64,000 nt of DNA from Ranitomeya imitator. Lineage: Eukaryota. Of this stretch, positions 496-44,071 are shown piece by piece (within the stretch, counting starts at the first letter, position 1; every line of letters starts with the position of its first letter). A program made the translations under genes and the position numbers. Under the pieces are notes generated by a model. It saw only the letters and a list, made by a program, of their open reading frames with translations, searched no databases and was not told where the DNA came from. The stretch is from positions 216,752,001 through 216,816,000 of the forward strand of contig NC_091286.1 of the NCBI RefSeq assembly GCF_032444005.1, read 5' to 3'.

Positions 496-757
496 GGCTA
501 CGTTCACATTAGCGTTTTGCGGTGCTGCGTCGGCGACGCAACGCACAACGCATGCAAAACGCAGCTTTTAATGATTTTTGGCGCAGAAAAAACTGCATCA
601 TGCAGCGTTTTCTGTTGCGCCAAAAAACGCATGCGTCACAAAACGCAAGACAACACATGTCCATGCGCCCCCCATGTTAAATATAGGGGCGCATGGTGCA
701 TGCGTTTCCGCGGCTGCGCCCGACGCAGCCCCGCAAAACGCTAATGTGAATGTAGCC
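496..757. mobile_element. PIF/Harbinger-type MITE (GGCTACGTTCAC family)
   Basis: TIR GGCTACGTTCACATTAGCG ... CGCTAATGTGAATGTAGCC; flanks TAA (493-495)/AAA; same family at 49669 and 57190. Confidence 0.85.
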
Positions 758-1517
758 AAAGGCACAAGGCATACAAGTAGGCAAAAATCCTCATGCGCAC
801 AGGACAGCTTATTCTAAAAAGTCCCATTAAGTCACAGAAAACTAATACCATTTCATGGATTTTTTATATATGTGAACCCTTACAGTGTTGTAGGACGTTA
901 TATTCAGAGCACATATCTGATCCATTATGACAACATTATATTTCCTATAAAGTATGCGAATTGCCTCTTCGGAGAGGACTAGAACGCTACAGCGCCACTT
1001 ATTGGAAGCAACCATAAAAGTCACAATTGACCCATTAATGAGACTTGCAATATGACTAAAGGTACCGTCACATTAAGCGACGCTGCAGCGATCCAGACAA
1101 CGATCCCGATCGCTGCAGCGTCGCTGTTTGGTCGCTGGAGAGCTGTCACACAGACAGCTCTCCAGCGACCAACGATGCCGGTCCCCTGGTAACCAGGGTA
1201 AACATCGGGTTACTAAGCGCAGGGCCGCGCTTAGTAACCCGATGTTTTTTTTATTCAAATATTTTTATTAAACAGTAAGAAAAATATAAATAGATTACAT
1301 TACTGTAAACAGTACATACATATGTTCTGCATTTTCAATAAACTTTTTAATCCCAAACCAGCTTCCCTCCTCTCCCCTCCCCCCCATCCCCGGAGACCCA
1401 AGAAGAACCACTCCGATCCTCCCAAACGTCTATCCTTAACCAAGAACAAGAAGGTGTCATGTCAATACTGCTCCCACGGGGGCAGAGTACCCAAAAAACT
1501 AGAAAACAATCTCCAGA

Positions 1518-4500
1518 TCACGCCGACTTGAGCCAAGGGTTCCACAACTTGTTGAAAAGGTCCATCTTGTTTCTTTTAGAATAAATGCTCTTCTCCAATG
1601 CCACGATATAGTCCACTTGTGTCATGAAATCTCTTCTCGTTGGTGGCTCTACCCTTATCCAAAACTTAGTGATCAACTTTCGAGCAATAAACAGCAATCT
1701 TGCAATGACTGTTTTGTACGAGTTATCAGTTACAATCTCCTCTACGTAACCCAATATGCATACCAAAAGATCCCGTGGTATCGAACATTTGTATGTTAGT
1801 CCCACTTTATTTAGCACCACGATCCAAAACGAGGACAGCCTGGGGCACTGCCACATCATATGGAGGATACCCGCCTCGGACTGCGAGCACCTAGGGCATT
1901 CGGAGTTAGGTCTCAGACCGGCTTTATACAACATGTCCGGAGTTCTATAAGCCCTATGAATGACCAACAGCTGTGACAGCCTCCCAGGCTCACCCATCGA
2001 GATCCTGGGCACGTATTCCAATATTGAGTCCCACTGATCGCCGTCAATCACCCCCAGGTCTGCCTCCCACTTTGCTCTAGCTCTGATAGGGTGCCCCTCT
2101 AAAAAGGAAAATAGAAGAAATTCATATATTCCTGAGATCACCCCCTTCGTGCCTTCCCCTATGAGGATAAAATCTAGCATTAGATCCACCTGGATCTCCA
2201 TAGGCCCCTTCTTACATTGTGCCCGATATGCATGAGAGATGCGGTTGTATTGGTACAATTCAGAGCTTGGCAGCTGAAATTCCTCCTGTAGTGTTTCAAA
2301 ATTCTTAATTCTACCTTGGTGCAAAACTTGGATTATCCGAGAAATTCCCGCTCCCTTCCAAACATGGAATCCCTCCATCTGTCTAAACTCCTGCAAGAGA
2401 CAATTATTCCATATGGGCGAAAACCTAGTAAGTGCCCTCACACCCCTAATTCCTTTAACTTTGTCCCAGACCTTATGGATGAGCCTAACAGTGCAAAATT
2501 TAGTCCCCTTCTCTCGGAAATGCCCACCCTCCAAACCCTCAACTAGTACCCTTGACCCAATCAGTTTCCTCAGACTGCAGGGTGTCCGCTCCCAACCCGA
2601 TTCCACACCCCATCCCCTAAAATGCTGACATTGTGAAGCCAAAAAATATAACCATGGGTTGGGCAGTGCCACTCCCCCCTCCGTCTTTGGTCTTTGTAGG
2701 ATTTCCTGTTTAAATCTAGGACTTTTCCCTCCCCAAATCAGCTCGCCAAATAGAGATTTAATCCTCCGAAATCTATTCTGCGATATCCATATAGGGGAGT
2801 TGTGCAGCACGTAGAGAAGTTGCGGCATCACAATCATCTTTATTAGATTTATTCTACCAATGACCGATAAGTGTAACTTTTTCCACGCCTGAACCTTAAT
2901 ACGTATCTTCCGCAATAGTGGCGCCAAATTTAGTTCCTCAAAACTCGTCAGAGGCAACGCAATCTGAATCCCCAAATATTTAAATTTATCCACCAACCTC
3001 AACTTTGCATGAGATTCCCTCATAGCACTATTCTCATAATCCCCATCCACTAACATCATATTGGACTTTTCCCAATTGATTCTCAGGCCAGAGTAGCTCC
3101 CAAATTCTTCAATAATGGCCTCCGCCCCTGTCAGGGACTCCCCCGAATCCTCCAAGAAGAGCAAAATATCATCTGCGTATAACGCTACCTTCTCTTCCGA
3201 ATCCCCGTACATAAATCCCCTCACCTCCCGGGAACCTCTAATTTTTGCAGCAAGGGGTTCCACCGCCAGGGCAAAAAGCAGTGGGGACAAAGGACAGCCC
3301 TGTCTAGTCCCCCTAGACAAAGAGAAAGTCTCAGAGAGGACGCCATTCACCCTTACCTTTGCCACCGGGGAAGAATACAGCAGCCGCACCCATGAGATGA
3401 ACCTAGGTCCAAACCCCAAACGTTCCAACACTGTCCACAGATAACTCCACTCCACACAGTCAAAGGCTTTGTGGGCGTCCAAAGATGCCACAACCCGTTT
3501 GCCAGCATTATCTGAAGGGATTTGTAAATTTAAGAACAACCTTCTCAGGTTGATTGCCGTTGACTTGTTAGGCATGAAGCCTGACTGGTCAGGGTGCACC
3601 AATTTGTCTATCACCCTACTCAACCTATTTGCCAAGGCTTTTGCCAAAATCTTAATATCGGCAGTCAATAGTGAAATTGGTCTATAGGATTCTGGCATCA
3701 GTGGATCTTTATCAGCCTTAGGGATAACCACCACTATAGCCTCTCTCATCGACAAAGGCAACTCCCCTCTTTCCAGCGAGCTATTGTACACCCCCACCAG
3801 CCTGGCCAACAGAGTTTCTTTCAAGGTCCTATAAACCTCAGCTGGAATGCCGTCCGCTCCCGGGGCCTTACCCCCCGCAACACCTGCCAAGGCCACCCCC
3901 AATTCCTCCTCCCCAATCGGTTCCTCCAATAATTCACACTCCTCTCTACTCAACCGGGGCATATCAATTTCTTCCAAGTACCTCTCCATATCCTCGGATC
4001 CCTTCTCCACACTGGACGTATATAATTTTCCATAAAATTTCCTGAACACTTCCAGGATCTGCTCCCCCTGAGTAACCAACGTTCTCTCCTCCGTCTTAAT
4101 AGAGTAAACATGTGAAGAGTCTCTTTGTGCGGATGCCACTACCGAGAGCAAGTGCCCCACTTTCTCCCCCTCCGAGTAGAAAGTTTCTCTCTGGAAGGCC
4201 CTCAACCTCTCCGCCTTTTTCAAAAATAACTGATCGACCTCCCGCTGAGCTGCCCTCATACGACTCTGAGATTCCCCGGTACGATGTTCCCCCAATGCCG
4301 CCTCTGCTGCTTTCAACTCCTCTAAAACGCCCTGATCCCGCTCTTTGGTCCTTGTCTTATGTCTTGAGATATCCCTAAACAAAATTCCCCTTAAATAAGC
4401 TTTCATGGTGTCCCACACTACATGGCATTCCGCGCTCCCTTCATTAATTTTGAAAAATTTCTCTATCTCTACTCCCACCTTTGCCATGTCCAAAATTTGT

Positions 4501-5255
4501 AGCCAGACTGGGTGAATTTTCCAACCCGCCCTCCTCAAACCAACCTGACCTGACAACTTTAGAGAGACCCGAACTGGGCTATGGTCTGATAAAATCCTGG
4601 GATTATATTCCACCCCGTTTAACAGTTCGTTCATCCTATCGTTACCCAAGGCAACATCAATTCTTGACATCGAGCCGTATGTAGTCGAGCAACAGGAATA
4701 GGAATATGTATTGGCATTGCGGACCCTCCATAAATCAATCCAATCAATTTCTCTGAGATAGTCATTACCGTCCCTGCGCTGTGATGCGTGGTTACTCTTG
4801 TCCCAGTGGTCATTTGCTATATTGTTTACATCACCCACCACCAGAAGGGGGATCCCATCCCAACCTCTTATAGCCTCCAATATGTCCTGGATCTTCCTTC
4901 CAGAGTATGGCGGAGGTATATACAATGATACTATGCACATTAAACAGTCAAAGATTTTACACACTAGCAAAACGTATTGACCATCCGTATCAATTTTAAC
5001 CTCAACTTCCTCAAATGGGGTATTAGTGTGAATTAAGACTGACACTCCCCTCGCGTAACTAGAGAACGTCGAATGATACGCCTTGCGCACCCACCGTTTC
5101 TGTAATATATCAACTTTTTCCTCCACTAGGTGGGTTTCTTGCAGGCAGATCACCGAGGGCCTCTGTTTCAGAAGATACTGAAATATTGCCGCGCGCTTAG
5201 TGGCGTCCGCTAACCCCCTAACATTCCAGCTTATAATATTAACGTCCCCTCCCAT
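1518..5255 (-). CDS. L1 ORF2p (APE endonuclease, reverse transcriptase, C-terminal CCHC), 1245 aa
   Basis: SWNVRG, LQETH, GDVN, SRID, SDH (APE); QGCPLSP, YADD (RT); CPRC...HMMWQC. Confidence 0.97.
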   Translation of the reverse strand: MGGDVNIISWNVRGLADATKRAAIFQYLLKQRPSVICLQETHLVEEKVDILQKRWVRKAYHSTFSSYARGVSVLIHTNTPFEEVEVKIDTDGQYVLLVCKIFDCLMCIVSLYIPPPYSGRKIQDILEAIRGWDGIPLLVVGDVNNIANDHWDKSNHASQRRDGNDYLREIDWIDLWRVRNANTYSYSCCSTTYGSMSRIDVALGNDRMNELLNGVEYNPRILSDHSPVRVSLKLSGQVGLRRAGWKIHPVWLQILDMAKVGVEIEKFFKINEGSAECHVVWDTMKAYLRGILFRDISRHKTRTKERDQGVLEELKAAEAALGEHRTGESQSRMRAAQREVDQLFLKKAERLRAFQRETFYSEGEKVGHLLSVVASAQRDSSHVYSIKTEERTLVTQGEQILEVFRKFYGKLYTSSVEKGSEDMERYLEEIDMPRLSREECELLEEPIGEEELGVALAGVAGGKAPGADGIPAEVYRTLKETLLARLVGVYNSSLERGELPLSMREAIVVVIPKADKDPLMPESYRPISLLTADIKILAKALANRLSRVIDKLVHPDQSGFMPNKSTAINLRRLFLNLQIPSDNAGKRVVASLDAHKAFDCVEWSYLWTVLERLGFGPRFISWVRLLYSSPVAKVRVNGVLSETFSLSRGTRQGCPLSPLLFALAVEPLAAKIRGSREVRGFMYGDSEEKVALYADDILLFLEDSGESLTGAEAIIEEFGSYSGLRINWEKSNMMLVDGDYENSAMRESHAKLRLVDKFKYLGIQIALPLTSFEELNLAPLLRKIRIKVQAWKKLHLSVIGRINLIKMIVMPQLLYVLHNSPIWISQNRFRRIKSLFGELIWGGKSPRFKQEILQRPKTEGGVALPNPWLYFLASQCQHFRGWGVESGWERTPCSLRKLIGSRVLVEGLEGGHFREKGTKFCTVRLIHKVWDKVKGIRGVRALTRFSPIWNNCLLQEFRQMEGFHVWKGAGISRIIQVLHQGRIKNFETLQEEFQLPSSELYQYNRISHAYRAQCKKGPMEIQVDLMLDFILIGEGTKGVISGIYEFLLFSFLEGHPIRARAKWEADLGVIDGDQWDSILEYVPRISMGEPGRLSQLLVIHRAYRTPDMLYKAGLRPNSECPRCSQSEAGILHMMWQCPRLSSFWIVVLNKVGLTYKCSIPRDLLVCILGYVEEIVTDNSYKTVIARLLFIARKLITKFWIRVEPPTRRDFMTQVDYIVALEKSIYSKRNKMDLFNKLWNPWLKSA

Positions 5256-5596
5256 TTTCTAGAGAAAAAACAATGAGTTAGAGCAGTCTCCTTCAGGTCT
5301 CCCCCGACACCCCCCCACCCCCTCCCATCCCCCTTTCCCAACTTCCCCATCTAAAACTCAATAGAATTCAACTAGTACAAACTTTCTTTCTCTGTATGAG
5401 AACTGAGAGCTCTTGATACAACCTAGAACTGAGCCCCTTGCAGTCCATCTCTCCCCCTCCCACCGCTATCAACATGAAATATTCTTTGCGCCGCCGAGCA
5501 CACTATTTCAAACTTTTGGGTGCATTCTGTAAGACAAGTTCAAAAATCACCATCAGGGGGTATAAACAAATGAGTGACGAAGTCTCAGCGTCAGTC

Positions 5597-6718
5597 TCAT
5601 CGGCTCCGATCCACGCCAATTTTCTTAGTATTGGTATCTAGCCAGTGCATAGCCTCCTCCGGGTTCTGGAAAAAATGAACACGGTCCAGCGCCACCACCC
5701 TGAGCTTAGCCGGGTATAACATCGAATATTTTAGGTCCAGGTCTCGGAGCCGCCTCTTGACCTCGCCGAACCTCATTCTCAGTTTCTGCACCGATGCCGA
5801 GTAGTCCGGATAAATGGAGATCCGATTTCCGTCTATGCTCAGTCCGTCACTGATCCTGGCCTTCCTTAGTAGGGTTTCCCGGTCCCGATAGTCCAAAATT
5901 TTTGCCAGCAGAGCTCGAGGGGGGGATCCAGGCGGCAGGGGCCGGGTGGGGACTCTATGGGCCCTTTCCACGGAAAAGTGGTTGGTAAGGTCTGCTCCTC
6001 CCACCGAGTTTTTGAGCCATGCCTCAATGTATTCCGTAGGATTATTCCCCTCCACCTTCTCCGGCACCCCAATTATTCTTAGATTGTTCCTACGGGAACG
6101 ATTTTCCAGGTCATCTGTTTTAAATTCCAGTTCTGCAATGCGCTGAATGTATCTCTTTTCTCTTTTCAACAGTTCATTTGTCTGATCTTCCACACTGCCC
6201 ACGCGCTCCTCCACCACCTCCACTCTTTTCTCCACTTTACGCATAGCAGAATTAAGGGACTTCATTTCAACTGTTAAATCGTCTACCCTTAGGTTCAGCG
6301 CAGCCAGGGCAGATTTGCAGTGTATAACGACTGAGAAAATGTCCTGCAGTGTAGGTTCCCCCACGTTTGATTGCTGCGCACCCTCAGAGTCCTTAGCCTG
6401 CACTGGACTGGCGGTGGGTGACATGTTAGTTGTCTCTTGCATCTCCTGCCTCTTCCCTGGAGAAAGCCGCTCCTCCACCACACTGAGGGTGTCATCCCCT
6501 CCTCTCTCCTGTCTCTGCGGGACTTCCTCCTCATCTGGCCCCTCAGGGCCCAGCAGCAGGGCACCCCCCTCCTCTGTCCGAGCAAACCGCTCCAGCCGGG
6601 CGATTACCTCAAGCCTCCGGCGGTATGCGGTGCTGGCTCTGGCCGCCTCCTCCTCTGCCACGGCGCCATCTTGGATTTTCGCGCCAGCCGCGGGCGCTGA
6701 CTGTCTTTTGCGCGGCAT
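5597..6718 (-). CDS. L1 ORF1p (coiled coil + RRM/CTD), 373 aa
   Basis: Heptad-rich region followed by LENRSRRNNLRIIGVPE, ERAHR, YPAKL, typical of vertebrate L1 ORF1. Confidence 0.95.
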   Translation of the reverse strand: MPRKRQSAPAAGAKIQDGAVAEEEAARASTAYRRRLEVIARLERFARTEEGGALLLGPEGPDEEEVPQRQERGGDDTLSVVEERLSPGKRQEMQETTNMSPTASPVQAKDSEGAQQSNVGEPTLQDIFSVVIHCKSALAALNLRVDDLTVEMKSLNSAMRKVEKRVEVVEERVGSVEDQTNELLKREKRYIQRIAELEFKTDDLENRSRRNNLRIIGVPEKVEGNNPTEYIEAWLKNSVGGADLTNHFSVERAHRVPTRPLPPGSPPRALLAKILDYRDRETLLRKARISDGLSIDGNRISIYPDYSASVQKLRMRFGEVKRRLRDLDLKYSMLYPAKLRVVALDRVHFFQNPEEAMHWLDTNTKKIGVDRSR

Positions 6719-7471
6719 TACCGCTCTTCTCCTTTCGCTGCCTCCGGCACTCTCCTCCGTGCCCAGGGGTCCTGCGGAGCAACTTCGCCCGGTTTTCGGC
6801 GCTCGGCGGCGCCTTCAAGGGTGAGGATTTAGGAGCGGTGCGGGGAGAGAGATCCGTCGCACGTCCGCTCACATCGCTCGCTAGGCCACGCCCCCAGTAA
6901 CCCGATGTTTACCCTGGTCACCAGCGTAAAAGTAAAAAAAAAAAAAACAGTACATACTTACATTCCGGCGTCTGTCCTTTCCGGCGCTGTGCTTCTCTGC
7001 ACTAAGCGCCGGCCGGAAAGCACAGCACAGCGGTGACGTCACCGCTGTGCTCTGCTTTCCGGCCCCTGCGCTTACACAGTGCAGAGAAGCACAGCGCCGG
7101 AGAGGACAGACGCCGGAATGTAAGTATGTAGTGTTTGTTTTTTTTTACTTTTACGCTGGTAACCAGGGTAAACATCGGGTTACTAAGCGCGGCCCTGCGC
7201 TTAGTAACCTGATGTTTACCCTGGTTACCAGTGAAGACATCGCTGAATCGGCGTCACACACGCCGATTCAGCGATGTCTGCAGGGAGTCCAGCGACGAAA
7301 TAAAGTTTTGGACTTTCTGCGCCGACCAACAATGGCACAGCAGGATCCTGATCGCTGCTGCCTGTCACACTGAACAATATGGCTAGCCAGGACGCTGCAA
7401 CGTCACGGATCGCTAGCGATATCGTTCAGTGTGAAGGTACCTTTAGGATAAAAAACAAATCAGAATGTCAA

Positions 7472-7512
7472 TTTACAGACAGTGTTTCGGGGTGTTGCCC
7501 CTCATCAATGCA
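7472..7512 (-). ncRNA. Type I hammerhead ribozyme motif, copy 1 (C3U core variant)
   Basis: Minus strand: UGCA-UUGAUGA-GGGG CAACA CCCC-GAAAC ACU GUC-UGUA. Confidence 0.65.
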
Positions 7513-7797
7513 GAGCATGAGAACTGATTTGGCTAGGTGAGAGGTTCTGGACTGAGGTGTAAGGGCTAACGTTTCTCCCTGTGGAGAGTGACATACCAGC
7601 TCTGGCATGCCAATGTAAGTTGACTTATTCGCCGTGCAATGCTCCTCTGGGAAATGAAATGTGCAAATTGCCTCTTCAGAGTGAGAGGACTCGACTTGAA
7701 CTTCCATCTGTTGGAAGCAGCGTTCCTACAAGTCACAATCCACCCTTTAACGAGTCGTGCAATATGACTTAGGATAAAAGCCAAATCAGTATCTCAA

Positions 7798-7842
7798 TTT
7801 GCAGACACGGTGTTTCGGGGTATTGCCCCTCGTCGGTGCAAA
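7798..7842 (-). ncRNA. Type I hammerhead ribozyme motif, copy 2 (CCGACGA core variant)
   Basis: Minus strand: UUUGCA-CCGACGA-GGGG CAAUA CCCC-GAAAC ACCGU GUC-UGCAAA; perfect 6-bp stem I. Confidence 0.65.
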
Positions 7843-7980
7843 GTTTGAGATCTGACTTGGCCTATCAAGAAGATTAAAAGGACAAAGTCTGTGTGAACAA
7901 TGAGCAAAGGGAAATAAGATTTCAACTCTAAAGGGGTTGGTGACGAGTTTAGAAGTCTCTTTAATGTGAACTAACTGCTT

Positions 7981-8185
7981 TCAAATTCAAATTCAAATTC
8001 AAATGAGCTTTATTGGCAGGATTAAGTACATGTTAGCATTGCCAAAGCATATGGTAAAAATACGGGGGTGGGGGAGGGGGGGCATATAGAGGTCCAGGGA
8101 ATATCAAATTCCTTTTAGAGGATAGGGGATGTTTCCAGGGTGGGGTATAGGAGTCCATGACATATCGGGCTCTTTCTTGATGACA
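7981..8185 (-). mobile_element. Probable LINE 3'-end remnant with short-tandem tail
   Basis: (TCAAAT)x4 next to a TTTATT (minus-strand AATAAA) signal; no recognisable ORF. Confidence 0.35.
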
Positions 8186-8374
8186 AGATCTCTGGCTGAG
8201 GATCCTGACTTCCTGCTATGTCTTGTCAGATTCCTCCTCACGTCCTGGCTTTGTAATCTGAGGTGGAATTACAGTCTTGTGATTCCCATACTGTGAGGGT
8301 GAGCGGGACTCCATTCAGCAGAGCTCACACGCACATGCTGCTGAACACACAGCTCTTCCTTCTATCTCTATGTA

Positions 8375-9986
8375 CAGGTCCTTCTCAAAAAATTAGCATA
8401 TAGTGTTAAATTTCATTATTTACCATAATGTAATGATTACAATTAAACTTTCATATATTATAGATTCATTATCCACCAACTGAAATTTGTCACGTCTTTT
8501 ATTGTTTTAATACCGATGATTTTGGCATACAACTCCTGATAACCCAAAAAACCTGTCTCAATAAATTAGCATATCAAGAAAAGGTTCTCTAAACGACCTA
8601 TTACCCTAATCTTCTGAATCAACTAATTAACTCTAAACACATGCAAAAGATACCTGAGGCTTTTATAAACTCCCTGCCTGGTTCATTACTCAAAACCCCC
8701 ATCATGGGTAAGACTAGCGACCTGACAGATGTCAAGAAGGCCATCATTGACACCCTCAAACAAGAGGGTAAGACCCAGAAAGAAATTTCTCAACAAATAG
8801 GCTGTTCCCAGAGTGCTGTATCAAGGCACCTCAATGGTAAGTCTGTTGGAAGGAAACAATGTGGCAGAAAACGCTGTACAACGAGAAGAGGAGACCGGAC
8901 CCTGAGGAAGATTGTGGAGAAGGACCGATTCCAGACCTTGGGGAACCTGAGGAAGCAGTGGACTGAGTCTGGTGTGGAAACATCCAGAGCCACCGTGCAC
9001 AGGCGTGTGCAGGAAATGGGCTACAGGTGCCGCATTCCCCAGGTAAAGCCACTTTTGAACCATAAACAGCGGCAGAGGCGCCTGACCTGGGCTACAGAGA
9101 AGCAGCACTGGACTGTTGCTAAGTGGTCCCAAGTACTTTTTTCTGATGAAAGCAAATTTTGCATGTCATTCGGAAATCAAGGTGCCAGAGTCTGGAGGAA
9201 GACTGGGGAGAAGGAAATGCCAAAATGCCTGAAGTCCAGTGTCAAGTACCCACAGTCAGTGATGGTGTGGGGTGCCATGTCAGCTGCTGGTGTTGGTCCA
9301 CTGTGTTTCATCAAGGGCAGGGTCAATGCAGCTAGCTATCAGGAGATTTTGGAGCACTTCATGCTTCCATCGGCTGAAATGCTTTATGGAGATGAAGATT
9401 TCATTTTTCAGCACGACCTGGCACCTGCTCACAGTGCCAAAACCACTGGTAAATGGTTTACTGACCATGGTATTACTGTGCTCAATTGGCCTGCCAACTC
9501 TCCTGACCTGAACCCCATAGAGAATCTGTGGGATATTGTGAAGAGAAAGTTGAGAGACGCAAGACCCAACACTCTGGATGAGCTTAAGGCCGCTATTGAA
9601 GCATCCTGGGCCTCCATAACATCTCAGCAGTGTCACAGGCTGATTGCCTCCATGCCACGCCGCATTGAAGCAGTCATTTCTGCCAAAGGATTCCCGAGCA
9701 AGTATTGAGTGCATAACTGAACATTATTATTTAATGGTTTTTTTGTTTGTTATTAAAAAACACTTTTATTTGATTGGATGGGTGAAATATGCTAATTTAT
9801 TGAGACAGGTTTTTTGGGTTATCAGGAGTTGTATGCCAAAATCATCAGTATTAAAACAATAAAAGACCTGACAAATTTCAGTTGGTGGATAATGAATCTA
9901 TAATATATGAAAGTTTAATTGTAATCATTACATTATGGTAAATAATGAAATTTAACACTATATGCTAATTTTTTGAGAAGGACCTG
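8375..9986 (+). mobile_element. Tc1-family DD34E transposon with ~200-bp IR/DR TIRs, intact
   Basis: TA TSDs (8373-74, 9987-88); TIRs 8375-8574 and 9787-9986 nearly identical, with internal AAATTAGCATAT direct repeats. Confidence 0.97.
8704..9708 (+). CDS. Tc1 transposase (DD34E), ~334 aa
   Basis: Paired-like HTH, GRK NLS, SDESKF, FQHDLAPAH, 34 aa spacing to SPDLNPIENLW; MGKTSDL start preferred over the upstream ATG at 8641. Confidence 0.95.
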   Translation: MGKTSDLTDVKKAIIDTLKQEGKTQKEISQQIGCSQSAVSRHLNGKSVGRKQCGRKRCTTRRGDRTLRKIVEKDRFQTLGNLRKQWTESGVETSRATVHRRVQEMGYRCRIPQVKPLLNHKQRQRRLTWATEKQHWTVAKWSQVLFSDESKFCMSFGNQGARVWRKTGEKEMPKCLKSSVKYPQSVMVWGAMSAAGVGPLCFIKGRVNAASYQEILEHFMLPSAEMLYGDEDFIFQHDLAPAHSAKTTGKWFTDHGITVLNWPANSPDLNPIENLWDIVKRKLRDARPNTLDELKAAIEASWASITSQQCHRLIASMPRRIEAVISAKGFPSKY

Positions 9987-16974: not shown

Positions 16975-19900
16975 TGTTATGTTTGCTAATGACAGGTGTT
17001 ATGAAGGCAATCCAGAAACACAGTGTGCTTAGCGATCAGAGCGCACACAGTGATCTGACAAATACCCAAAAATAAAAGAACGAGCTCTGAGACGTGGAAA
17101 CTCTGTAGACTGCACACCTGATCCTATCCTAAACACAACTAAAAGCGGCTGTGGATTGCGCCTAACAACTACCTAGGCAACTCGGCACAGCCTAAGAAAC
17201 TAGCTAGCCTGAAGATAGAAAAATAGGCCTGACTTGCCCCAGAGAAACTCCCCAAAGGAAAAGGCAGCCCCCCACATATAATGACTGTGAGTAAGATGAA
17301 AAGACAAAACGTAGGGATGAAATAGATTCAGCAAAGTGGGGCCCGATATTCTAGGACAGAGCGAGGACAGTAAAGCGAACTTTGCAGTCTACAAAAAACC
17401 CTAAAGCAAAACCACGCAAAGGGGGCAAAAAAAACCCACCGTGCCGAACTAACGGCACGGCGGTACACCCTTTGCGTCTCAGAGCTTCCAGCAAAACAAA
17501 GACAAGCTGGACAGAAAAAAAGCAACAAAAAAGCAAAAAGCACTTAGCTATACAGAGCAGCAGGTCACAGGAACAATCAGGAGAAGCTCAGATCCAACAC
17601 TGAAACATTGACAAGGAGCAAGGATAGCAGCATCAGGCGGAGTTAAGTAATGAAGCAGTTAACGAGCTCACCAGAACACCTGAGGGAGGAAGCTCAGAAG
17701 CTGCAGTACCACTTGTGACCACAGGAGTGAATTCAGCCACAGAATTCACAACAGTACCCCCCCCTTGAGGAGGGGTCACCGAACCCTCACCAGAGCCCCC
17801 AGGCCGACCAGGATGAGCCGCATGAAAGGCACGAACAAGATCGGAAGCATGAACATCAGAGGCAAAAACCCAGGAATTATCTTCCTGAGCATAACCCTTC
17901 CATTTAACCAGATACTGGAGTTTCCGTCTTGAAACACGAGAATCCAAAATCTTCTCCACAATATACTCCAATTCCCCCTCCACCAAAACCGGGGCAGGAG
18001 GCTCAACAGATGGAACCATAGGTGCCATGTATCTCCGCAACAACGACCTATGGAATACATTATGTATGGAAAAGGAGTCTGGGAGGGTCAAACGAAAAGA
18101 CACAGGATTGAGAACCTCAGAAATCCTATACAGACCAATAAAACGAGGTTTAAATTTAGGAGAGGAAACCTTCATAGGAATATGACGAGAAGATAACCAA
18201 ACCAGATCCCCAACACGAAGTCGGGGACCCACACGGCGTCTGCGATTAGCGAAAAGTTGAGCTTTCTCCTGGGACAAGATCAAATTGTCCACTACCTGAG
18301 TCCAGATCTGCTGCAACCTATCCACCACAGAATCCACACCAGGACAGTCCGAAGACTCAACCTGTCCTGAAGAGAAACGAGGATGGAACCCAGAATTGCA
18401 AAAAAATGGAGAAACCAAGGTAGCCGAGCTGGCCCGATTATTAAGGGCGAACTCAGCCAACGGCAAAAAGGACACCCAATCATCCTGGTCTGCAGAAACA
18501 AAACATCTCAGATATGTTTCCAAGGTCTGATTGGTTCGTTCGGTCTGGCCATTAGTCTGAGGATGGAAAGCCGAGGAAAAGGATAGGTCAATGCCCATCC
18601 TACCACAAAAGGCTCGCCAAAACCTTGAAACAAACTGGGAACCTCTGTCAGAAACAATATTCTCAGGAATGCCATGCAACCGAACCACATGCTGAAAGAA
18701 CAAAGGTACCAAATCAGAGGAGGAAGGCAATTTAGCCAAGGGCACCAGATGGACCATTTTAGAAAAGCGATCACAGACCACCCAAATGACTGACATCTTT
18801 TGAGAAACGGGAAGGTCAGAAATGAAATCCATCGAAATATGTGTCCAAGGCCTCTTTGGGACCGGCAAGGGCAAAAGCAACCCACTGGCACGAGAACAGC
18901 AGGGCTTAGCCCGAGCACAAATCCCACAGGACTGCACAAAAGTACGTACATCCCGTGACAGAGATGGCCACCAGAAGGATCTAGCCACTAACTCTCTGGT
19001 ACCAAAGATTCCAGGATGACCAGCCAACACCGAACAATGAAGTTCAGAGATAAGTTTATTAGTCCACCTATCAGGGACGAACAGTTTCTCTGCTGGACAA
19101 CGATCAGGTTTATTCGCCTGAAATTTTTGCAGCACCCGCCGCAAATCAGGGGAGATGGCAGACACAATGACTCCTTCCTTGAGGATACCCGCTGGCTCAG
19201 ATAAACCCGGAGAGTCGGGCACAAAACTCCTAGACAGAGCATCCGCCTTCACATTTTTAGAGCCCGGAAGGTACGAAATCACAAAGTCGAAGCGGGCAAA
19301 AAATAACGACCAACGGGCCTGTCTAGGATTCAAGCGCTTGGCAGACTCGAGATAAGTCAAGTTCTTATGATCAGTCAATACCACCACGCGATGCTTAGCT
19401 CCTTCAAGCCAATGACGCCACTCCTCGAATGCCCACTTCATGGCCAGCAACTCTCGATTGCCCACATCATAATTACGCTCAGCGGGCGAAAACTTCCTGG
19501 AAAAGAAAGCACATGGTTTCATCACTGAGCAATCAGAACCTCTCTGTGACAAAACCGCCCCTGCTCCAATCTCAGAAGCATCAACCTCGACCTGGAACGG
19601 AAGAGAAACATCTGGCTGACACAACACAGGGGCAGAACAAAAACGACGCTTCAACTCCTGAAAAGCTTCCACAGCAGCAGAAGACCAATTAACCAAATCA
19701 GCACCCTTCTTGGTCAAATCGGTCAATGGTTTGGCAATGCTAGAAAAATTACAGATGAAGCGACGATAAAAATTAGCAAAGCCCAGGAACTTTTGCAGAC
19801 TTTTCAGAGATGTCGGCTGAATCCAATCCTGGATGGCCTGGACCTTAACTGGATCCATCTCGATAGTAGAAGGGGTAAAGATGAACCCCAAAAATGAAAC

Positions 19901-22735
19901 TTTCTGCACACCGAAGAGACACTTTGATCCCTTCACAAACAAAGAGTTAGCACGCAGGACCTGAAAAACCATTCTGACCTGCTTCACATGAGACTCCCAA
20001 TCATCTGAGAAGATCAAAATGTCATCCAAGTAAACAATCAGGAATTTATCCAGATACTCACGGAAGATGTCATGCATAAAAGACTGAAACACAGATGGAG
20101 CATTGGCAAGTCCGAACGGCATCACTAGATACTCAAAATGACCCTCGGGCGTATTGAATGCAGTTTTCCATTCATCTCCTTGCCTGATTCTCACCAGATT
20201 ATACGCACCACGAAGATCTATCTTAGTGAACCAACTAGCCCCCTTAATCCGAGCAAACAAGTCAGATAACAATGGCAAGGGATACTGAAATTTAACAGTG
20301 ATCTTATTAAGAAGGCGGTAATCAATACACGGTCTCAGCGAACCATCCTTCTTGGCTACAAAGAAGAACCCTGCTCCCAGTGGTGATGACGATGGGCGAA
20401 TATGTCCCTTCTCCAGGGATTCCTTCACATAACTGCGCATAGCGGCGTGTTCGGGCACGGATAAATTAAATAATCGACCTTTAGGGAATTTACTACCAGG
20501 AATCAAATTGATAGCACAATCACAATCCCTATGCGGAGGTAGAGCATCGGACTTGGGCTCTTCAAATACATCCTGATAATCAGACAAGAACTCTGGGACC
20601 TCAGAAGGGGTGGATGACGAAATCGACAAAAATGGAACATCACCATGTACCCCCTGACAACCCCAGCTGGATACCGACATGGAATTCCAATCCAATACTG
20701 GATTATGGGTTTGTAGCCATGGCAACCCCAACACGACCACATCATGCAGATTATGCAACACCAGAAAGCGAATAACTTCCTGATGTGCAGGAGCCATGCA
20801 CATGGTCAGCTGGGCCCAGTATTGAGGTTTATTCTTGGCCAAAGGTGTAGCATCAATTCCTCTCAATGGAATAGGACACCGCAAAGGCTCCAAGAAAAAC
20901 CCACAACGTTTAGCATAATCCAAATCCATCAGATTCAGGGCAGCACCCGAATCCACAAACGCCATGACAGAAAACGACGACAAAGAGCATATCAAGGTAA
21001 TGGACAGAAGGAATTTGGACTGTACAGTACCAATGACGGCAGACCTAGCGGACCGCTTAGTGCGCTTAGGACAATCAGAAATAGCATGAGTGGAATCACC
21101 ACAGTAGAAACACAGACCATTCAGACGTCTGTATTCCTGCCGTTCAACTCTAGTCATAGTCCTATCGCACTGCATAGGCTCAGGTTTAACCTCAGGCAGT
21201 ACCGCCAAATGGTGCACAGATTTACGCTCGCGCAAGCGTCGACCGATCTGAATGGCCAAAGACAAAGACTCATTCAAACCAGCAGGCATAGGAAATCCCA
21301 CCATGACATCCTTAAGAGCCTCAGAGAGACCCTTTCTGAACAAAGCTGCCAGCGCAGATTCATTCCACTGAGTGAGTACTGACCATTTCCTAAATTTCTG
21401 ACAATATACTTCTATATCATCCTGACCCTGGCACAAAGCCAGCAAATTTTTCTCAGCCTGATCCACTGAATTAGGCTCATCGTACAGCAATCCGAGCGCC
21501 AGGAAAAACGCATCGACACTACTCAATGCAGGGTCTCCTGGCGCAAGAGAAAATGCCCAGTCTTGAGGGTCGCCGCGCAAAAAAGAAATAATAATCAAAA
21601 CCTGTTGAATAGGATTACCAGAAGAATGAGGTTTCAAGGCCAGAAATAGCTTACAATTATTTTTGAAACTTAGAAACTTAGTTCTATCTCCAAAAAACAA
21701 ATCAGGAATAGGAATTCTTGGTTCTAACATAGATTTCTGATCAATAGTATCTTGAATTTTTTGTACATTTATAACGAGATTATCCATTGAAGAGCACAGA
21801 CCCTGAATATCCATGTCCACACCTGTGTCCAGAATCACCCAAATGTCTAGGGGAAAAAAAAAAAGTGAACACAGAGCTGAGGAAAAAAAAAAAAAAAAAT
21901 GATGTCAGAACTTTTTCTTTCCCTCTATTGCGAATCATTAGTTAGGCTCCTTGTACTGTTATGTTTGCTAATGACAGGTGTTATGAAGGCAATCCAGAAA
22001 CACAGTGTGCTTAGCGATCAGAGCGCACACAGTGATCTGACAAATACCCAAAAATAAAAGAACGAGCTCTGAGACGTGGAAACTCTGTAGACTGCACACC
22101 TGATCCTATCCTAAACACAACTAAAAGCGGCTGTGGATTGCGCCTAACAACTACCTAGGCAACTCGGCACAGCCTAAGAAACTAGCTAGCCTGAAGATAG
22201 AAAAATAGGCCTGACTTGCCCCAGAGAAACTCCCCAAAGGAAAAGGCAGCCCCCCACATATAATGACTGTGAGTAAGATGAAAAGACAAAACGTAGGGAT
22301 GAAATAGATTCAGCAAAGTGGGGCCCGATATTCTAGGACAGAGCGAGGACAGTAAAGCGAACTTTGCAGTCTACAAAAAACCCTAAAGCAAAACCACGCA
22401 AAGGGGGCAAAAAAAACCCACCGTGCCGAACTAACGGCACGGCGGTACACCCTTTGCGTCTCAGAGCTTCCAGCAAAACAAAGACAAGCTGGACAGAAAA
22501 AAAGCAACAAAAAAGCAAAAAGCACTTAGCTATACAGAGCAGCAGGTCACAGGAACAATCAGGAGAAGCTCAGATCCAACACTGAAACATTGACAAGGAG
22601 CAAGGATAGCAGCATCAGGCGGAGTTAAGTAATGAAGCAGTTAACGAGCTCACCAGAACACCTGAGGGAGGAAGCTCAGAAGCTGCAGTACCACTTGTGA
22701 CCACAGGAGTGAATTCAGCCACAGAATTCACAACA
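16975..22735 (-). mobile_element. Full-length Ty3/Gypsy chromovirus (sushi/Tf1-like) LTR retrotransposon
   Basis: 779-bp LTRs (16975-17753, 21957-22735) TGT...ACA, apparently identical; 5-bp TSD ATAAC; PPT at ~17754-17770; single gag-pol ORF. Confidence 0.97.
17633..21838 (-). CDS. Gag-Pol polyprotein (Gag, CCHC, protease, RT, RNase H, integrase, chromodomain), 1401 aa
   Basis: CFYCGDSTHAISDC; FVDSGA; YLDD; VDAS; HHCC and DDE integrase (SMDFI, SDRGSQF, GQTER); chromodomain YIVEKILDSR...YLVKWKGY...NSW. Confidence 0.97.
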   Translation of the reverse strand: MILDTGVDMDIQGLCSSMDNLVINVQKIQDTIDQKSMLEPRIPIPDLFFGDRTKFLSFKNNCKLFLALKPHSSGNPIQQVLIIISFLRGDPQDWAFSLAPGDPALSSVDAFFLALGLLYDEPNSVDQAEKNLLALCQGQDDIEVYCQKFRKWSVLTQWNESALAALFRKGLSEALKDVMVGFPMPAGLNESLSLAIQIGRRLRERKSVHHLAVLPEVKPEPMQCDRTMTRVERQEYRRLNGLCFYCGDSTHAISDCPKRTKRSARSAVIGTVQSKFLLSITLICSLSSFSVMAFVDSGAALNLMDLDYAKRCGFFLEPLRCPIPLRGIDATPLAKNKPQYWAQLTMCMAPAHQEVIRFLVLHNLHDVVVLGLPWLQTHNPVLDWNSMSVSSWGCQGVHGDVPFLSISSSTPSEVPEFLSDYQDVFEEPKSDALPPHRDCDCAINLIPGSKFPKGRLFNLSVPEHAAMRSYVKESLEKGHIRPSSSPLGAGFFFVAKKDGSLRPCIDYRLLNKITVKFQYPLPLLSDLFARIKGASWFTKIDLRGAYNLVRIRQGDEWKTAFNTPEGHFEYLVMPFGLANAPSVFQSFMHDIFREYLDKFLIVYLDDILIFSDDWESHVKQVRMVFQVLRANSLFVKGSKCLFGVQKVSFLGFIFTPSTIEMDPVKVQAIQDWIQPTSLKSLQKFLGFANFYRRFICNFSSIAKPLTDLTKKGADLVNWSSAAVEAFQELKRRFCSAPVLCQPDVSLPFQVEVDASEIGAGAVLSQRGSDCSVMKPCAFFSRKFSPAERNYDVGNRELLAMKWAFEEWRHWLEGAKHRVVVLTDHKNLTYLESAKRLNPRQARWSLFFARFDFVISYLPGSKNVKADALSRSFVPDSPGLSEPAGILKEGVIVSAISPDLRRVLQKFQANKPDRCPAEKLFVPDRWTNKLISELHCSVLAGHPGIFGTRELVARSFWWPSLSRDVRTFVQSCGICARAKPCCSRASGLLLPLPVPKRPWTHISMDFISDLPVSQKMSVIWVVCDRFSKMVHLVPLAKLPSSSDLVPLFFQHVVRLHGIPENIVSDRGSQFVSRFWRAFCGRMGIDLSFSSAFHPQTNGQTERTNQTLETYLRCFVSADQDDWVSFLPLAEFALNNRASSATLVSPFFCNSGFHPRFSSGQVESSDCPGVDSVVDRLQQIWTQVVDNLILSQEKAQLFANRRRRVGPRLRVGDLVWLSSRHIPMKVSSPKFKPRFIGLYRISEVLNPVSFRLTLPDSFSIHNVFHRSLLRRYMAPMVPSVEPPAPVLVEGELEYIVEKILDSRVSRRKLQYLVKWKGYAQEDNSWVFASDVHASDLVRAFHAAHPGRPGGSGEGSVTPPQGGGTVVNSVAEFTPVVTSGTAASELPPSGVLVSSLTASLLNSA

Positions 22736-40963: not shown

Positions 40964-41011
40964 TACAACGCGTTTCGGCTGCTATTTTTACATTGCAGCC
41001 TTCATCAGGTA
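40964..41011 (-). ncRNA. Minimal PLE-type hammerhead motif (left arm)
   Basis: UAC-CUGAUGA-A-GGCUGC...GCAGCC-GAAAC GC GUU-GUA; palindromic ACGCGU stem III. Confidence 0.7.
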
Positions 41012-42121: not shown

Positions 42122-43563
42122 TTGAGATCAGTAGATCATTATTTATCATCAGTATCAGGACTGCGGGAGGAACAAAAAACATTTTTGTTGGAAGGGTTGA
42201 AATTCATATTAACGCACAATATCTTTGAGTTCCAGGGTAAACTCTATTTACAGCGCCTTGGTACAGCGATGGGGACTCGGGTAGCGCCAAGTTTCGCAAA
42301 TCTCTTCATGGGACGTTTCGAGTCCTCATCGCTGTTGTATGCATCTGAATACAAAGAAAAAATATTACTATACCGTAGATATATAGATGATTTGATCATT
42401 TTCTGGGCCGGGACGGAGGAAGAAGCCTGTAAATTAATAGATTCTCTTAATAGCAATAACTGGGGCATCTCCTTTACGTCATGCATCAGAAGGGACAAAA
42501 TCGTGTTCCTGGACCTGGAATTGGGGAAGCGGGGGAAATTATAACAAAAACGCACTTCAAAAGCTGTGCTACGAATGGCTACGTGGACTTTAGAAGTGCG
42601 CATTATAAAAAATGGAAAACTAATGTACCATTCAGCCAGTTCTTAAGGATACGAAAAAACTGTACAAACACTAAAGATTATGTGACCCAATCAGCGATAC
42701 TGAAGAAAAGGTTCAGTGATAAGAAGTATCCAAAAAAATTAATCGAGGCAGCATACAGAAAGAATTTGGACAAAGTACAGGAGGATTGTCTCCCAAGTAG
42801 GAAGAGAAAAGATTGTAATGCAGAGGAAACTAGAGGGAAAGAACGGCCAGCAAGCAATGAGGAGAATAAGAGAAATCTTTGGAAGTTTAATTTTATAACA
42901 ACTTATAATAAAGGGAATGTATTGATAAGGAGAATTTTAAAAAAATATTGGTATATTTTAAAAAAAGATGTGATTCTTGGGAAAATGCTTCCAAGGGAAC
43001 AGGGAGTATCTTTTAGGAGAGGGGCGACAGTGAAAAATATTGTAGCTCAGAGTAAATTAAGAGAGGTTCCAAAAATAGAAAACATGATAGGAAACAATAC
43101 CAATGTGAATGGAGGGAAGATGAACACAGGAGTATATAGATGCTCTTCAAACAAATGTAAATGTTGTAAGATCATTAACCATGGAGCTCGGAGTATTCAA
43201 TCTAATACTACTGGGGAAACAATTAAGATTAAGCAGAGACTCACATGTAGAACGGATTTTGTCATCTATGTAGTGACTTGCAAATGCGGGCTCCAATACG
43301 TGGGACGAACTTCCCAGGAATTGAGTGCCCGGATGAATAATCACCGCTATAATGCAAAGAACGGGCAGATTAAACATAGTCTGTCCCGTCATCTCCTGCT
43401 GAAGCACAATAAATGCTTCTGCATTACGGTCACACCGCTGGAGCATATACCAAAAGGGGCTAATAACAGGAACAAATTATTAAACCGCAAGGAGTCATAT
43501 TGGATATATAGGTTACAAAGCCTTTATCCAAATGGACTTAATGATGTAGTAGAGAATGTGTAA
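42122..43563 (+). pseudogene. 5'-truncated, frameshifted Penelope RT + GIY-YIG endonuclease
   Basis: GTAMGTRVAPSFANLFM, RYIDD, FLDL; then VIYVVTCKCGLQYVGRT...RMNNHR and ESYWIYRL...GLN; two ORFs in different frames. Confidence 0.92.
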
Positions 43564-44023: not shown

Positions 44024-44071
44024 TACCTGATGAAGGCTGCACTGTAAAAATAGCAGCCGAAACGCGTTGTA
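44024..44071 (+). ncRNA. Minimal PLE-type hammerhead motif (right arm)
   Basis: UAC-CUGAUGA-A-GGCUGC ACUGUAAAAAUA GCAGCC-GAAAC GC GUU-GUA. Confidence 0.7.

What the first reader, a model, noticed from the sequence alone, without database searches (positions are those of the whole stretch)
954..7860. Satellite-2/retrozyme-like ~326-nt tandem unit with hammerhead ribozymes in a frog, split by a MITE+L1 insertion
Seen: two type I HHR motifs on the minus strand (7472-7512, 7798-7842). Each has a GGGG-5nt-CCCC stem II, GAAAC, a short stem III and a GUC triplet, and the predicted cleavage sites lie 326 nt apart. Their flanks are direct repeats (TTAGGATAAAA..CAAATCAG..TCAATTT.CAGAC). Segment 956-1059 is homologous to 7663-7771, so removing the 1060-7442 insertion restores a tandem dimer. 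At the same position the two units read ATGCGAAT (954) and GTGCAAAT (7661), each one mismatch from the snRNA octamer ATGCAAAT. Established: newt satellite 2 is a ~330-bp HHR-bearing tandem repeat with snRNA-type promoter elements, and amphibian retrozymes yield circular RNA monomers. Inference: this is a relic of an anuran satellite-2-like, circRNA-generating retroelement family. Both cores carry substitutions (C3U; U4C/U7C), so these copies may be decayed.
Basis: partly seen in the sequence, partly recalled or inferred. Interest (0 to 1): 0.85.

Follow-up and report, generated by a model that had tools for sequence, protein, structure and literature searches.

The report
Dead hammerhead retrozyme copy in frog
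This is an old, inactivated copy of a very abundant small non-coding mobile element (a "retrozyme") that carries self-cutting hammerhead RNA motifs, later split by two other transposons; the kind is already described in amphibians, so it is a clean but ordinary example.

Summary
On the minus strand there are about 1.6 tandem units of a 326-nt non-coding repeat: 7860/7864->7443, then 1056->953/947. Two type I hammerhead-like motifs have predicted cleavage sites exactly 326 nt apart (after C7804 and C7478). A MITE (1060-7442) splits the repeat, and that MITE itself carries a full-length L1 (1248-6895).

Each hammerhead core has one substitution (A: C3U; B: U4C). No Rfam hammerhead model matches, even at E<=10. 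Contigs from public DNA runs of two species nevertheless show a hugely repeated family. Its majority letters restore C3 (giving CUGAUGA) and a helix I base pair. So the motif is a real family feature and this copy is decayed.

The hammerhead is the "canonical" metazoan type I form: helix II of 4 bp, helix I of 6 bp with a long extension, and a short palindromic helix III. It is not the minimal form seen in this window's own Penelope element. No reverse-transcriptase ORF lies between or beside the units.

Best reading: a single, old, 5'-truncated insertion of a non-LTR retrozyme, shared by two species. This kind is already documented in amphibians, Xenopus included, and this scan has noted similar elements elsewhere in the same genome. 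Homology to newt satellite 2, the snRNA-type promoter and circular RNA remain untested.

The parts
7769..7864 (-). Unit B: the 5'-truncated first unit of the insertion (about 93-96 nt). It contains hammerhead B.
   Evidence: It repeats 7443-7535 directly at 82.8% identity. Similarity to unit A stops at 7861-7864.
7775..7863 (-). Hammerhead B with its extended helix I. Core CCGACGA lies at 7836-7830 (U4C). Helix II is GGGG/CCCC. Helix III is ACA/UGU. The predicted cut follows C7804.
   Evidence: Found by the descriptor scan. The fold shows a helix I extension of about 22 bp with a 2-nt internal loop: -38.4 kcal/mol, z = -6.5, and no shuffle out of 200 folds as well.
7443..7768 (-). Unit A: one complete 326-nt unit, non-coding.
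   Evidence: No ORF of 80 aa or more lies within it. GC of the whole element is 0.45. The cleavage-to-cleavage monomer 7803->7478 folds with its ends paired, z = -2.7.
7472..7512 (-). Hammerhead A, decayed. Core UUGAUGA lies at 7508-7502 (C3U). Helix I has a C.A mismatch. The predicted cut follows C7478.
   Evidence: The fold is not better than shuffles (z = -1.6). Family contigs read C at 7508 and U at 7513, which restores C3 and the helix I pair.
947..1056 (-). Unit C: the first ~104-110 nt of the next unit, forming the 3' end of the insertion.
   Evidence: 72% identity to 7654-7768, E about 1e-10; 71% and K2P 0.37. Similarity ends at 947-953.
7861..7869 (-). Candidate target-site duplication, upstream copy (CTTGATAGG in minus sense).
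   Evidence: It matches 944-952 at 8 of 9 positions. 279 of 5000 shuffles of the 31-nt boundary windows reach this match, so it is only suggestive.
944..952 (-). Candidate target-site duplication, downstream copy (CTTTATAGG in minus sense).
7661..7668 (+). Octamer-like GTGCAAAT; the family majority reads ATGCAAAT. Its counterpart ATGCGAAT lies at 954-961.
   Evidence: At 7661, G>A is seen in over 92% of laid depth in all four runs. Function was not tested.
1060..7442 (.). Later insertion: a non-autonomous DNA transposon (MITE) of about 720 bp, with arms at 1060-1247 and 6911-7442 and an L1 inside it.
   Evidence: The inverted termini are 25 nt long and 84% complementary (I9). TAA (1057-1059) and TTA (7443-7445) flank it, while the intact unit has one TTA. 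MITE sequence is very highly repeated in the DNA runs.
1248..6895 (-). Full-length L1 nested in the MITE. ORF1 is 5597-6718 and ORF2 is 1518-5255.
   Evidence: ORF2 (1245 aa) matches Exo_endo_phos (4e-12) and RVT_1 (1.6e-40). A 15-bp duplication AGTAACCCGATGTTT lies at 1233-1247 and 6896-6910, next to a short T run.

Best explanation
This is one old, dead insertion of about 520-530 bp from a very abundant family of non-LTR retrozymes. These are small non-coding retroelements whose roughly 326-nt unit carries a type I hammerhead ribozyme.

How the family most likely works is inferred from the published model for animal retrozymes; none of these steps was shown here:
1. Copies with two or more units are transcribed.
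2. The hammerheads have a very short, palindromic helix III, so they probably act as dimers. They cut the transcript into unit-length RNAs.
3. A host RNA ligase circularises these RNAs.
4. The reverse transcriptase/endonuclease of a Penelope-like element copies the RNA into a nicked target. This yields 5'-truncated inserts longer than one unit, flanked by a short target duplication.

What is shown for this locus:
- The insert begins inside a unit just upstream of hammerhead B. It runs through one full unit with hammerhead A and ends about 104-110 nt into the next unit.
- It was later split by a MITE, which was in turn hit by a full-length L1.
- Each hammerhead has lost one invariant core base (C3U in A, U4C in B), and helix I of A has decayed.

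From established hammerhead mutagenesis, recalled and not tested here, the copy should no longer self-cleave efficiently.
For: - Anatomy and the 326-nt spacing.
- Family abundance: with contigs of two DNA runs from two species laid at 80% or more likeness, summed depth over 7510-7850 is 1e5-1e6, against about 16-28 in the unique flank 7882-7974.
- Family majority letters: 7508 A>G on the + strand gives C3, so CUGAUGA. 7513 G>A restores a helix I pair.
- Hammerhead B keeps 6-bp helix I, 4-bp helix II, 3-bp helix III and a long helix I extension; z = -6.5.
- This is the 'canonical' metazoan type I architecture as described in PMC4209133. The window's own Penelope element instead has the minimal form, with an unpaired A after A9 and a 6-bp helix II.
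- No ORF of 80 aa or more lies within the repeat (longest stop-free stretch of the joined element 85 aa). There is no credible similarity to the window's Penelope ORFs in the element or its flanks (best E = 1.5).
- GC is 0.45 and the unit is 326 nt. Published ranges are under 50% GC and 150-450 bp, with an amphibian mean of 316 bp.
- The insert is bounded by unique DNA. A contig of organism A with 0 differences, and one of organism B with 10 differences and 6 gaps, both bridge the 5' junction. The insertion is therefore shared by two species (records 8 and 32).
- The units are 17-29% diverged from each other.
Against: - No Rfam hammerhead model matches, even at E<=10 on a 451-nt stretch. The gathering-threshold scan also missed the canonical-core hammerheads of the window's Penelope element, so this negative result is weak.
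- Both local cores are non-canonical.
- The target duplication is only 8 of 9 and p is about 0.06.
- Laid depth is lower over the catalytic core and helix II (7479-7509 and 7820-7850) than over neighbouring segments. The family majority differs at 7826 inside helix II. The family hammerhead was therefore not fully reconstructed.
- Transcription, self-cleavage, circular RNA and dependence on a Penelope-like element are all inferred from the literature, not shown here.
- The large divergence between units (K2P 0.20 and 0.37) means either great age or a template whose units already differed.
Confidence: 0.8

Rival explanations
1. The unit is the terminal repeat (pLTR) of a coding Penelope-like element. 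This locus would then be a solo or tandem pLTR remnant of a heavily truncated autonomous element, not a dedicated non-autonomous retrozyme.
For: Li et al. 2026 find that Xenopus retrozyme families are sister to pLTRs and that most Penelope insertions are 5'-truncated to a single terminal repeat. A Penelope element with hammerheads lies in the same window at about 40.8-44.5 kb. Some family contigs show opposite-strand joints at 7681/7780 and 7681/7807, a Penelope-style feature.
Against: The two hammerheads here are 326 nt apart with no ORF between them. There is no RT-like similarity in the element or its flanks. The hammerhead is the canonical form (4-bp helix II, 6-bp helix I), unlike the minimal form of the window's Penelope element. 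The unit has no sequence similarity to that element.
Confidence: 0.12
2. It is the eroded edge or remnant of a true tandem satellite array, a homologue of caudate satellite 2. Such an array would be maintained by unequal crossing-over and transcribed from an internal snRNA-type promoter, and would not be a dispersed retrotransposed copy.
For: The unit length is 326 nt, against about 330 bp for newt and axolotl repeats. It has an extended helix I with an internal loop, as in the 'extended hammerhead' of satellite 2. The family majority reads the perfect octamer ATGCAAAT. The strong divergence between neighbouring units fits an old array.
Against: Only about 1.6 units are present. They are bounded on both sides by unrelated DNA, single-copy on the side that was laid (depth about 16-28 at 7882-7974), and there is a possible target duplication. 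No other copy lies within the 64 kb window. Tandem Repeats Finder reports no array. Sequence homology to newt satellite 2 was not tested. One 8-mer is expected by chance in about 1% of such units, and it was noticed after the fact.
Confidence: 0.06
3. The hammerhead resemblance is fortuitous. On this view it is an ordinary non-coding repeat, such as a SINE-like element, in which a GGGG-loop-CCCC hairpin next to GAAAC mimics a degenerate ribozyme.
For: Neither local copy has an intact core. Rfam finds nothing. No cleavage was tested.
Against: The family majority restores C3 and a helix I pair. All three helices, GAAA and a GUC triplet are in the correct order and spacing in both units. The 23-mer is conserved between units that are otherwise 17% diverged. 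A variant in organism D keeps the palindromic helix III ACAC-N-GUGU (table 5c).
Confidence: 0.02

Closest known systems
Animal non-LTR retrozymes (Cervera and de la Pena 2020, PMC7229834; Li, Clavereau and Pollet 2026, bioRxiv 10.64898/2026.07.22.740005)
   Same: A non-coding unit of a few hundred nt with GC below 50% and no LTR, PBS or PPT. A type I hammerhead sits in each unit, with 6-bp helix I, 4-bp helix II and a very short palindromic helix III, which implies dimeric action. The family is very high in copy number and dispersed. Inserts are longer than one unit, and the monomer is self-paired. Such elements are reported in all amphibians sampled, with a mean unit of 316 bp.
   Different: This copy has only about 1.6 units, and both cores are mutated. 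Under the preprint's pipeline (tandem repeat finder plus intact motifs) it would not count as an 'active' retrozyme. Expression and circular RNA were not shown here.
Satellite 2 of newts and salamanders / axolotl Rtz_331 and Rtz_353
   Same: The unit is about 330 nt. It has an amphibian type I hammerhead with a weak helix III that works as a dimer, and an extended, internally looped helix I. The loop 2 sequence (CAAYA) resembles the CAAAUA-type loop of classical metazoan hammerheads; this last point is from memory and was not tested.
   Different: No sequence comparison with the caudate repeats was possible. Helix III here is 2-3 bp with a 3-nt loop, not 1 bp with a tetraloop as in HHR_Amex1. 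There is no long array at this locus. The snRNA-type promoter was not demonstrated.
Penelope-like element terminal repeats with minimal hammerheads (Cervera and de la Pena 2014, PMC4209133)
   Same: The hammerhead sits in a direct repeat. The insertion is 5'-truncated and partly tandem. This is the probable source of the enzymes that mobilise the family, and such an element co-occurs in this window.
   Different: There is no RT/GIY-YIG ORF between or next to the repeats. The hammerhead is not the minimal form: it has no unpaired base after A9, helix II is 4 bp rather than 6, and helix III is present.

Membership tests
Animal non-LTR retrozyme | Type I hammerhead with a conserved catalytic core (CUGANGA, GAAA, UH) in each unit | tested here: inconclusive
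   Both units have all elements in the right order, but each has one core substitution: C3U in A and U4C in B. The family majority restores C3 at the A position. The rest of the family core was not fully reconstructed. Rfam models do not match.
Animal non-LTR retrozyme | Head-to-tail repeats of about 150-450 bp, with at least two hammerheads delimiting a monomer | tested here: met
   About 1.6 units are present, with predicted cleavage sites 326 nt apart at 7804 and 7478.
Animal non-LTR retrozyme | Non-coding, with no LTR/PBS/PPT and GC below 50% | tested here: met
   No ORF of 80 aa or more lies within it. GC is 0.45, and the longest stop-free stretch is 85 aa with no similarity to the Penelope ORFs. 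PBS and PPT were not searched for explicitly.
Animal non-LTR retrozyme | Multi-copy dispersed family | tested here: met
   Summed contig depth is 1e5-1e6, against about 16-28 in the unique flank, in DNA runs of two species. Depth sums are not copy numbers.
Animal non-LTR retrozyme | Target-site duplication longer than 4 bp | tested here: inconclusive
   CTTGATAGG and CTTTATAGG overlap the two ends and match at 8 of 9 positions; 279 of 5000 shuffles do as well.
Animal non-LTR retrozyme | Expressed as unit-length linear and circular RNA | tested here: inconclusive
   No run holding the sequence is on record as RNA. Two small runs guessed to be RNA hold family contigs, but they are contigs and may be DNA. 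The 'goes back 326' joints are switches between the two paralogous units, not circle junctions.
Animal non-LTR retrozyme | Self-cleavage in vitro | not testable with these tools
   This needs transcription of intact family members.
Caudate satellite 2 | Sequence homology of the roughly 330-bp unit outside the hammerhead | not tested
   No newt or axolotl sequence is available in the tools. Only the unit length and the hammerhead style could be compared.
Caudate satellite 2 | Long tandem arrays | tested here: not met
   At this locus there are only about 1.6 units, bounded by unrelated DNA. Arrays elsewhere in the genome were not examined.
Caudate satellite 2 | Internal snRNA-type promoter (octamer plus proximal element) | tested here: inconclusive
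   The family majority reads ATGCAAAT at 7661-7668 on the + strand. The proximal element and transcription start were not tested.
Penelope-like element pLTR | Repeats flank an ORF encoding RT and a GIY-YIG endonuclease | tested here: not met
   Only 326 nt separate the hammerheads, with no ORF between them. No tblastn hit better than E = 1.5 to the window's Penelope ORFs was found.
Penelope-like element pLTR | Minimal hammerhead: longer helix II with an unpaired base after A9, and little or no helix III | tested here: not met
   Here helix II is 4 bp with no extra base, and helix III is 2-3 bp. The window's Penelope element does show the minimal form.

The most novel reading that the evidence does not exclude
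The 326-nt family could be the anuran counterpart, by descent, of caudate satellite 2. It would keep an internal octamer-dependent, snRNA-type promoter (the family majority reads ATGCAAAT) that drives abundant unit-length, circularising RNAs. A single hammerhead retroelement lineage with its own Pol II promoter would then have persisted since before frogs and salamanders split. One small run of a related species has high family depth but essentially none of the neighbouring MITE, which would fit strong selective expression if that run is RNA.
Probability: 0.08. Interest if true: 0.5.

Novelty: new member of a known kind. Interest (0 to 1): 0.15.

Why it matters
The locus adds one dated example of a hammerhead retrozyme family in a frog. 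The nesting order is clear: retrozyme first, then MITE, then a still-intact L1. The insertion is shared by two species, which is useful for dating repeats and for a family census. It does not change what is known. Retrozymes with dimer-dependent type I hammerheads are already described in amphibians, Xenopus included, and this scan has already recorded several in this genome. The one point a specialist might follow up is the near-unanimous perfect octamer in the family majority, because how animal retrozymes are transcribed is still open.

Tried and rejected
1. Rfam scans found no hammerhead family. I ran the whole window at gathering scores, 700-8300 at E<=10 and 7430-7880 at E<=10. The only hits were chance miRNA-like matches to MITE palindromes and to the helix I hairpin. 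I treat this as a weak negative, because the gathering-threshold scan also missed the canonical-core hammerheads of the window's Penelope element.

2. blastn of the unit against the window with word size 7 found no further copies.

3. A hammerhead descriptor scan of my own found only the two motifs, and only once positions 3 and 4 were relaxed.

4. The 'goes back 326/327' joints in read laying looked at first like tandem or circular junctions. They join equivalent positions of units A and B (7808 = 7482 + 326), so I rejected them as alignment switches.

5. The loose ends at 7681 and 7704 looked like family boundaries. They reflect a local indel in unit A; unit C matches the family sequence there.

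6. Both searches for RNA runs returned no run on record as RNA, so expression is unresolved.

7. Looking up earlier findings by sequence gave nothing.

8. The species could not be verified, because organism names are coded. 'Poison frog' comes only from earlier scan notes.

9. A literature search for hammerhead or retrozyme work in dendrobatids found nothing specific.

10. I printed no full family consensus. Only majority letters at individual positions are reported.

Full report
**What is in the sequence**

Reading the minus strand from 7864 downwards gives this order:
- a 93-96-nt partial unit (B, 7864/7861->7769);
- one complete 326-nt unit (A, 7768->7443);
- after a 6.4-kb interruption, the first 104-110 nt of a further unit (C, 1056->953/947).

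The repeats are real. Segment 7443-7481 matches 7769-7807 at 87%, and 7479-7533 matches 7807-7861 at 82%. Segment 947-1056 matches 7654-7768 at 72%, E about 1e-10. By MAFFT, A and B are 82.8% identical (K2P 0.20) and A and C are 71% identical (K2P 0.37). No other copy lies in the 64 kb window. Tandem Repeats Finder does not call an array.

**The hammerhead motifs**

A descriptor scan of both strands finds exactly two candidates, both on the minus strand, and only when core positions 3 and 4 are relaxed.

| Feature | Motif A | Motif B |
|---|---|---|
| Helix I | UGCA/UGUA | UUUGCA/UGCAAA (6 bp) |
| Core | UUGAUGA, 7508-7502 (C3U) | CCGACGA, 7836-7830 (U4C; the C at position 7 is allowed) |
| Helix II | GGGG-CAACA-CCCC | GGGG-CAAUA-CCCC |
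| Helix III | AC/GU | ACA/UGU |
| Cleavage triplet | GUC ending at C7478 | GUC ending at C7804 |

The shared 23-mer occurs nowhere else in the window and in none of 100 shuffles.

The region around B folds into a long hairpin. Helix I is extended by a further 7 + 9 bp beyond a 2-nt internal loop (-38.4 kcal/mol, z = -6.5). The region around A no longer folds better than shuffles (z = -1.6). The cleavage-to-cleavage monomer folds with its two ends paired (z = -2.7).

**Rfam**

There was no hit at gathering scores on the whole window. No hammerhead family appeared at E<=10 on 7.6 kb or on 451 nt. This weighs against the finding only slightly. The window's Penelope element carries two hammerheads with a perfect CUGAUGA...GAAAC core, and they were also missed at gathering scores.

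**Is it a family, and does the family have a proper core?**

I laid Logan contigs from four public runs on 7200-8100 at 80% or more likeness. Over 7510-7850, summed depth is 1e5-1e6 in the two DNA runs (organisms A and B). Over the unique flank 7882-7974 it is about 16-28. These sums are not copy numbers, but the unit clearly belongs to a very abundant repeat.

The majority letters are informative:
- At 7508, A>G on the + strand carries 70,010 of 71,748 depth in X1, and is similar in the other three runs. This turns U3 back into C3, giving CUGAUGA.
- No listed change affects 7507-7502.
- At 7513, G>A restores the mismatched helix I pair, giving UUUGCA as in motif B.

There are caveats. Laid depth is lower over the core and helix II than over neighbouring segments. 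The majority differs at 7826 inside helix II. Ninety rows of differences were not shown. I therefore did not reconstruct the family hammerhead fully, and I did not build a consensus.

A variant seen in organism D keeps the palindromic ACAC-N-GUGU at helix III (table 5c). That fits the dimeric mode of action described for amphibian hammerheads.

**One insertion, not an array**

Similarity to the unit stops at 7861-7864 on one side and at 947-953 on the other. Overlapping these ends are CTTGATAGG (7869->7861) and CTTTATAGG (952->944). They match at 8 of 9 positions, but 279 of 5000 shuffles of the boundary windows do as well, so the target duplication is only suggestive.

A contig of organism A with no differences (7815-7982) and one of organism B with 10 differences and 6 gaps (7802-7982) both bridge the 5' junction (records 8 and 32). 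The insertion is therefore present at the same site in two species and predates their split. Together with the 17-29% divergence between its own units, this marks the insert as old.

**Retrozyme or Penelope terminal repeat?**

- There is no ORF of 80 aa or more within the repeat.
- The element is 45% GC.
- tblastn with the window's own Penelope ORFs finds nothing better than E = 1.5 in the element or its flanks.
- The hammerhead has the architecture that Cervera and de la Pena call canonical for metazoan type I motifs: helix I 6 bp, helix II 4 bp, and a short helix III with a palindromic loop (PMC4209133).
- The Penelope element at about 40.8-44.5 kb has the minimal form: CUGAUGA, an unpaired A, and a 6-bp helix II GGCUGC/GCAGCC.

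At this locus the features of a non-LTR retrozyme are met and those of a pLTR are not. Li et al. 2026 argue that retrozymes derive from pLTRs, so the two classes are related in any case.

**Mechanism (inferred from the literature, not shown here)**

Following PMC7229834:
1. Multi-unit copies are transcribed.
2. Paired hammerheads cut the transcript to unit length.
3. A host RNA ligase circularises the RNA.
4. The enzymes of a Penelope-like element reverse-transcribe it into a new site, producing 5'-truncated inserts longer than one unit.

This copy has substitutions at invariant positions C3 and U4, so it should be inactive. That inference rests on established hammerhead mutagenesis recalled from memory.

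**The interruption**

The insertion at 1060-7442 has inverted termini AGGTACC.../...GGTACCT (25 nt, 84% complementary). It is flanked by TAA and TTA where the intact unit has one TTA. It is a MITE with a TWA-type duplication, and its sequence is extremely abundant in the DNA runs.

Inside it, at 1248-6895 on the minus strand, is a full-length L1. ORF1 is open (373 aa). ORF2 (1245 aa) carries endonuclease and RT domains. A 15-bp duplication AGTAACCCGATGTTT lies at 1233-1247 and 6896-6910. The order of events is therefore retrozyme, then MITE, then L1.

**The octamer**

The two units read ATGCGAAT and GTGCAAAT as stated. The family majority reads ATGCAAAT, with 7661 G>A in 92-99% of laid depth in all four runs. 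This is a real observation. However, one 8-mer in a 326-nt unit has about a 1% chance expectation and was picked after the fact. It lies on the strand opposite the hammerhead, and no proximal element or transcript start was examined. The snRNA-type promoter remains a lead.

**Expression**

No run holding the sequence is on record as RNA. Two small runs guessed to be RNA hold family contigs. One of them (organism D) has high family depth and almost none for the MITE. All of these are contigs and may be DNA. The 'goes back 326' joints are switches between units A and B, not circle junctions. Circular RNA is therefore untested.

**Comparison with what is known, and verdict**

Non-LTR retrozymes of 150-450 bp with dimer-dependent type I hammerheads are established in salamanders (PMC7229834). 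They have been reported in all seven amphibians sampled by Li, Clavereau and Pollet 2026, with 57 families in Xenopus and a mean unit of 316 bp. About 9,000 minimal hammerheads were already counted in Xenopus tropicalis in 2014.

Earlier notes of this scan describe several 314-353-nt hammerhead retrozyme insertions elsewhere in this same genome, which they call a poison frog. I could not verify the species.

The finding is real and well observed, but it is an ordinary, dead member of a known kind.

Noticed in passing
window 1248-6895 (-): A full-length L1 with both ORFs open: ORF1 is 373 aa and ORF2 is 1245 aa with endonuclease and RT domains. It has a 15-bp target duplication and only a short A tail. 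It looks young and is nested in a MITE.
   Followed up: partly
window 1060-1247 and 6911-7442: A MITE of about 720 bp with termini AGGTACC.../...GGTACCT, TAA/TTA flanks and several long internal palindromes (for example 6935-7003 / 7078-7146, 96% complementary). These palindromes give spurious miRNA-like Rfam hits. The MITE is extremely abundant in DNA runs of organisms A and B, but shows almost no depth in the one small run of organism D that was laid.
   Followed up: partly
window 40972-41008 (-) and 44027-44063 (+): Two opposed minimal hammerheads (CTGATGA-A-GGCTGC...GCAGCC-GAAAC) bracket a region with a weak RVT_1 match (42122-42544, E = 1e-4) and a 360-aa ORF with no Pfam hit. This fits the Penelope fold-back noted by the scan on this window. 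The hammerhead type differs from the one in the finding.
   Followed up: partly
window 8641-9708 (+): An open 355-aa Tc1/mariner-type transposase ORF (DDE_3 3.6e-19, HTH_Tnp_Tc3_2 8e-15), about 0.8 kb from the retrozyme relic.
   Followed up: no
window 17209-17248 and 22191-22230 (+): An identical 40-nt string appears twice, 4982 nt apart. It surfaced in the CTGANGA...GAAAC pattern search and probably marks a larger direct repeat or duplicated element. It does not look like a hammerhead.
   Followed up: no
window 7975-8098: The flank just beyond the unique stretch is itself repetitive. Summed depth reaches 1e4-1e5 in DNA runs, and it includes a (TTCAAA)4 microsatellite at 7980-8004.
   Followed up: no
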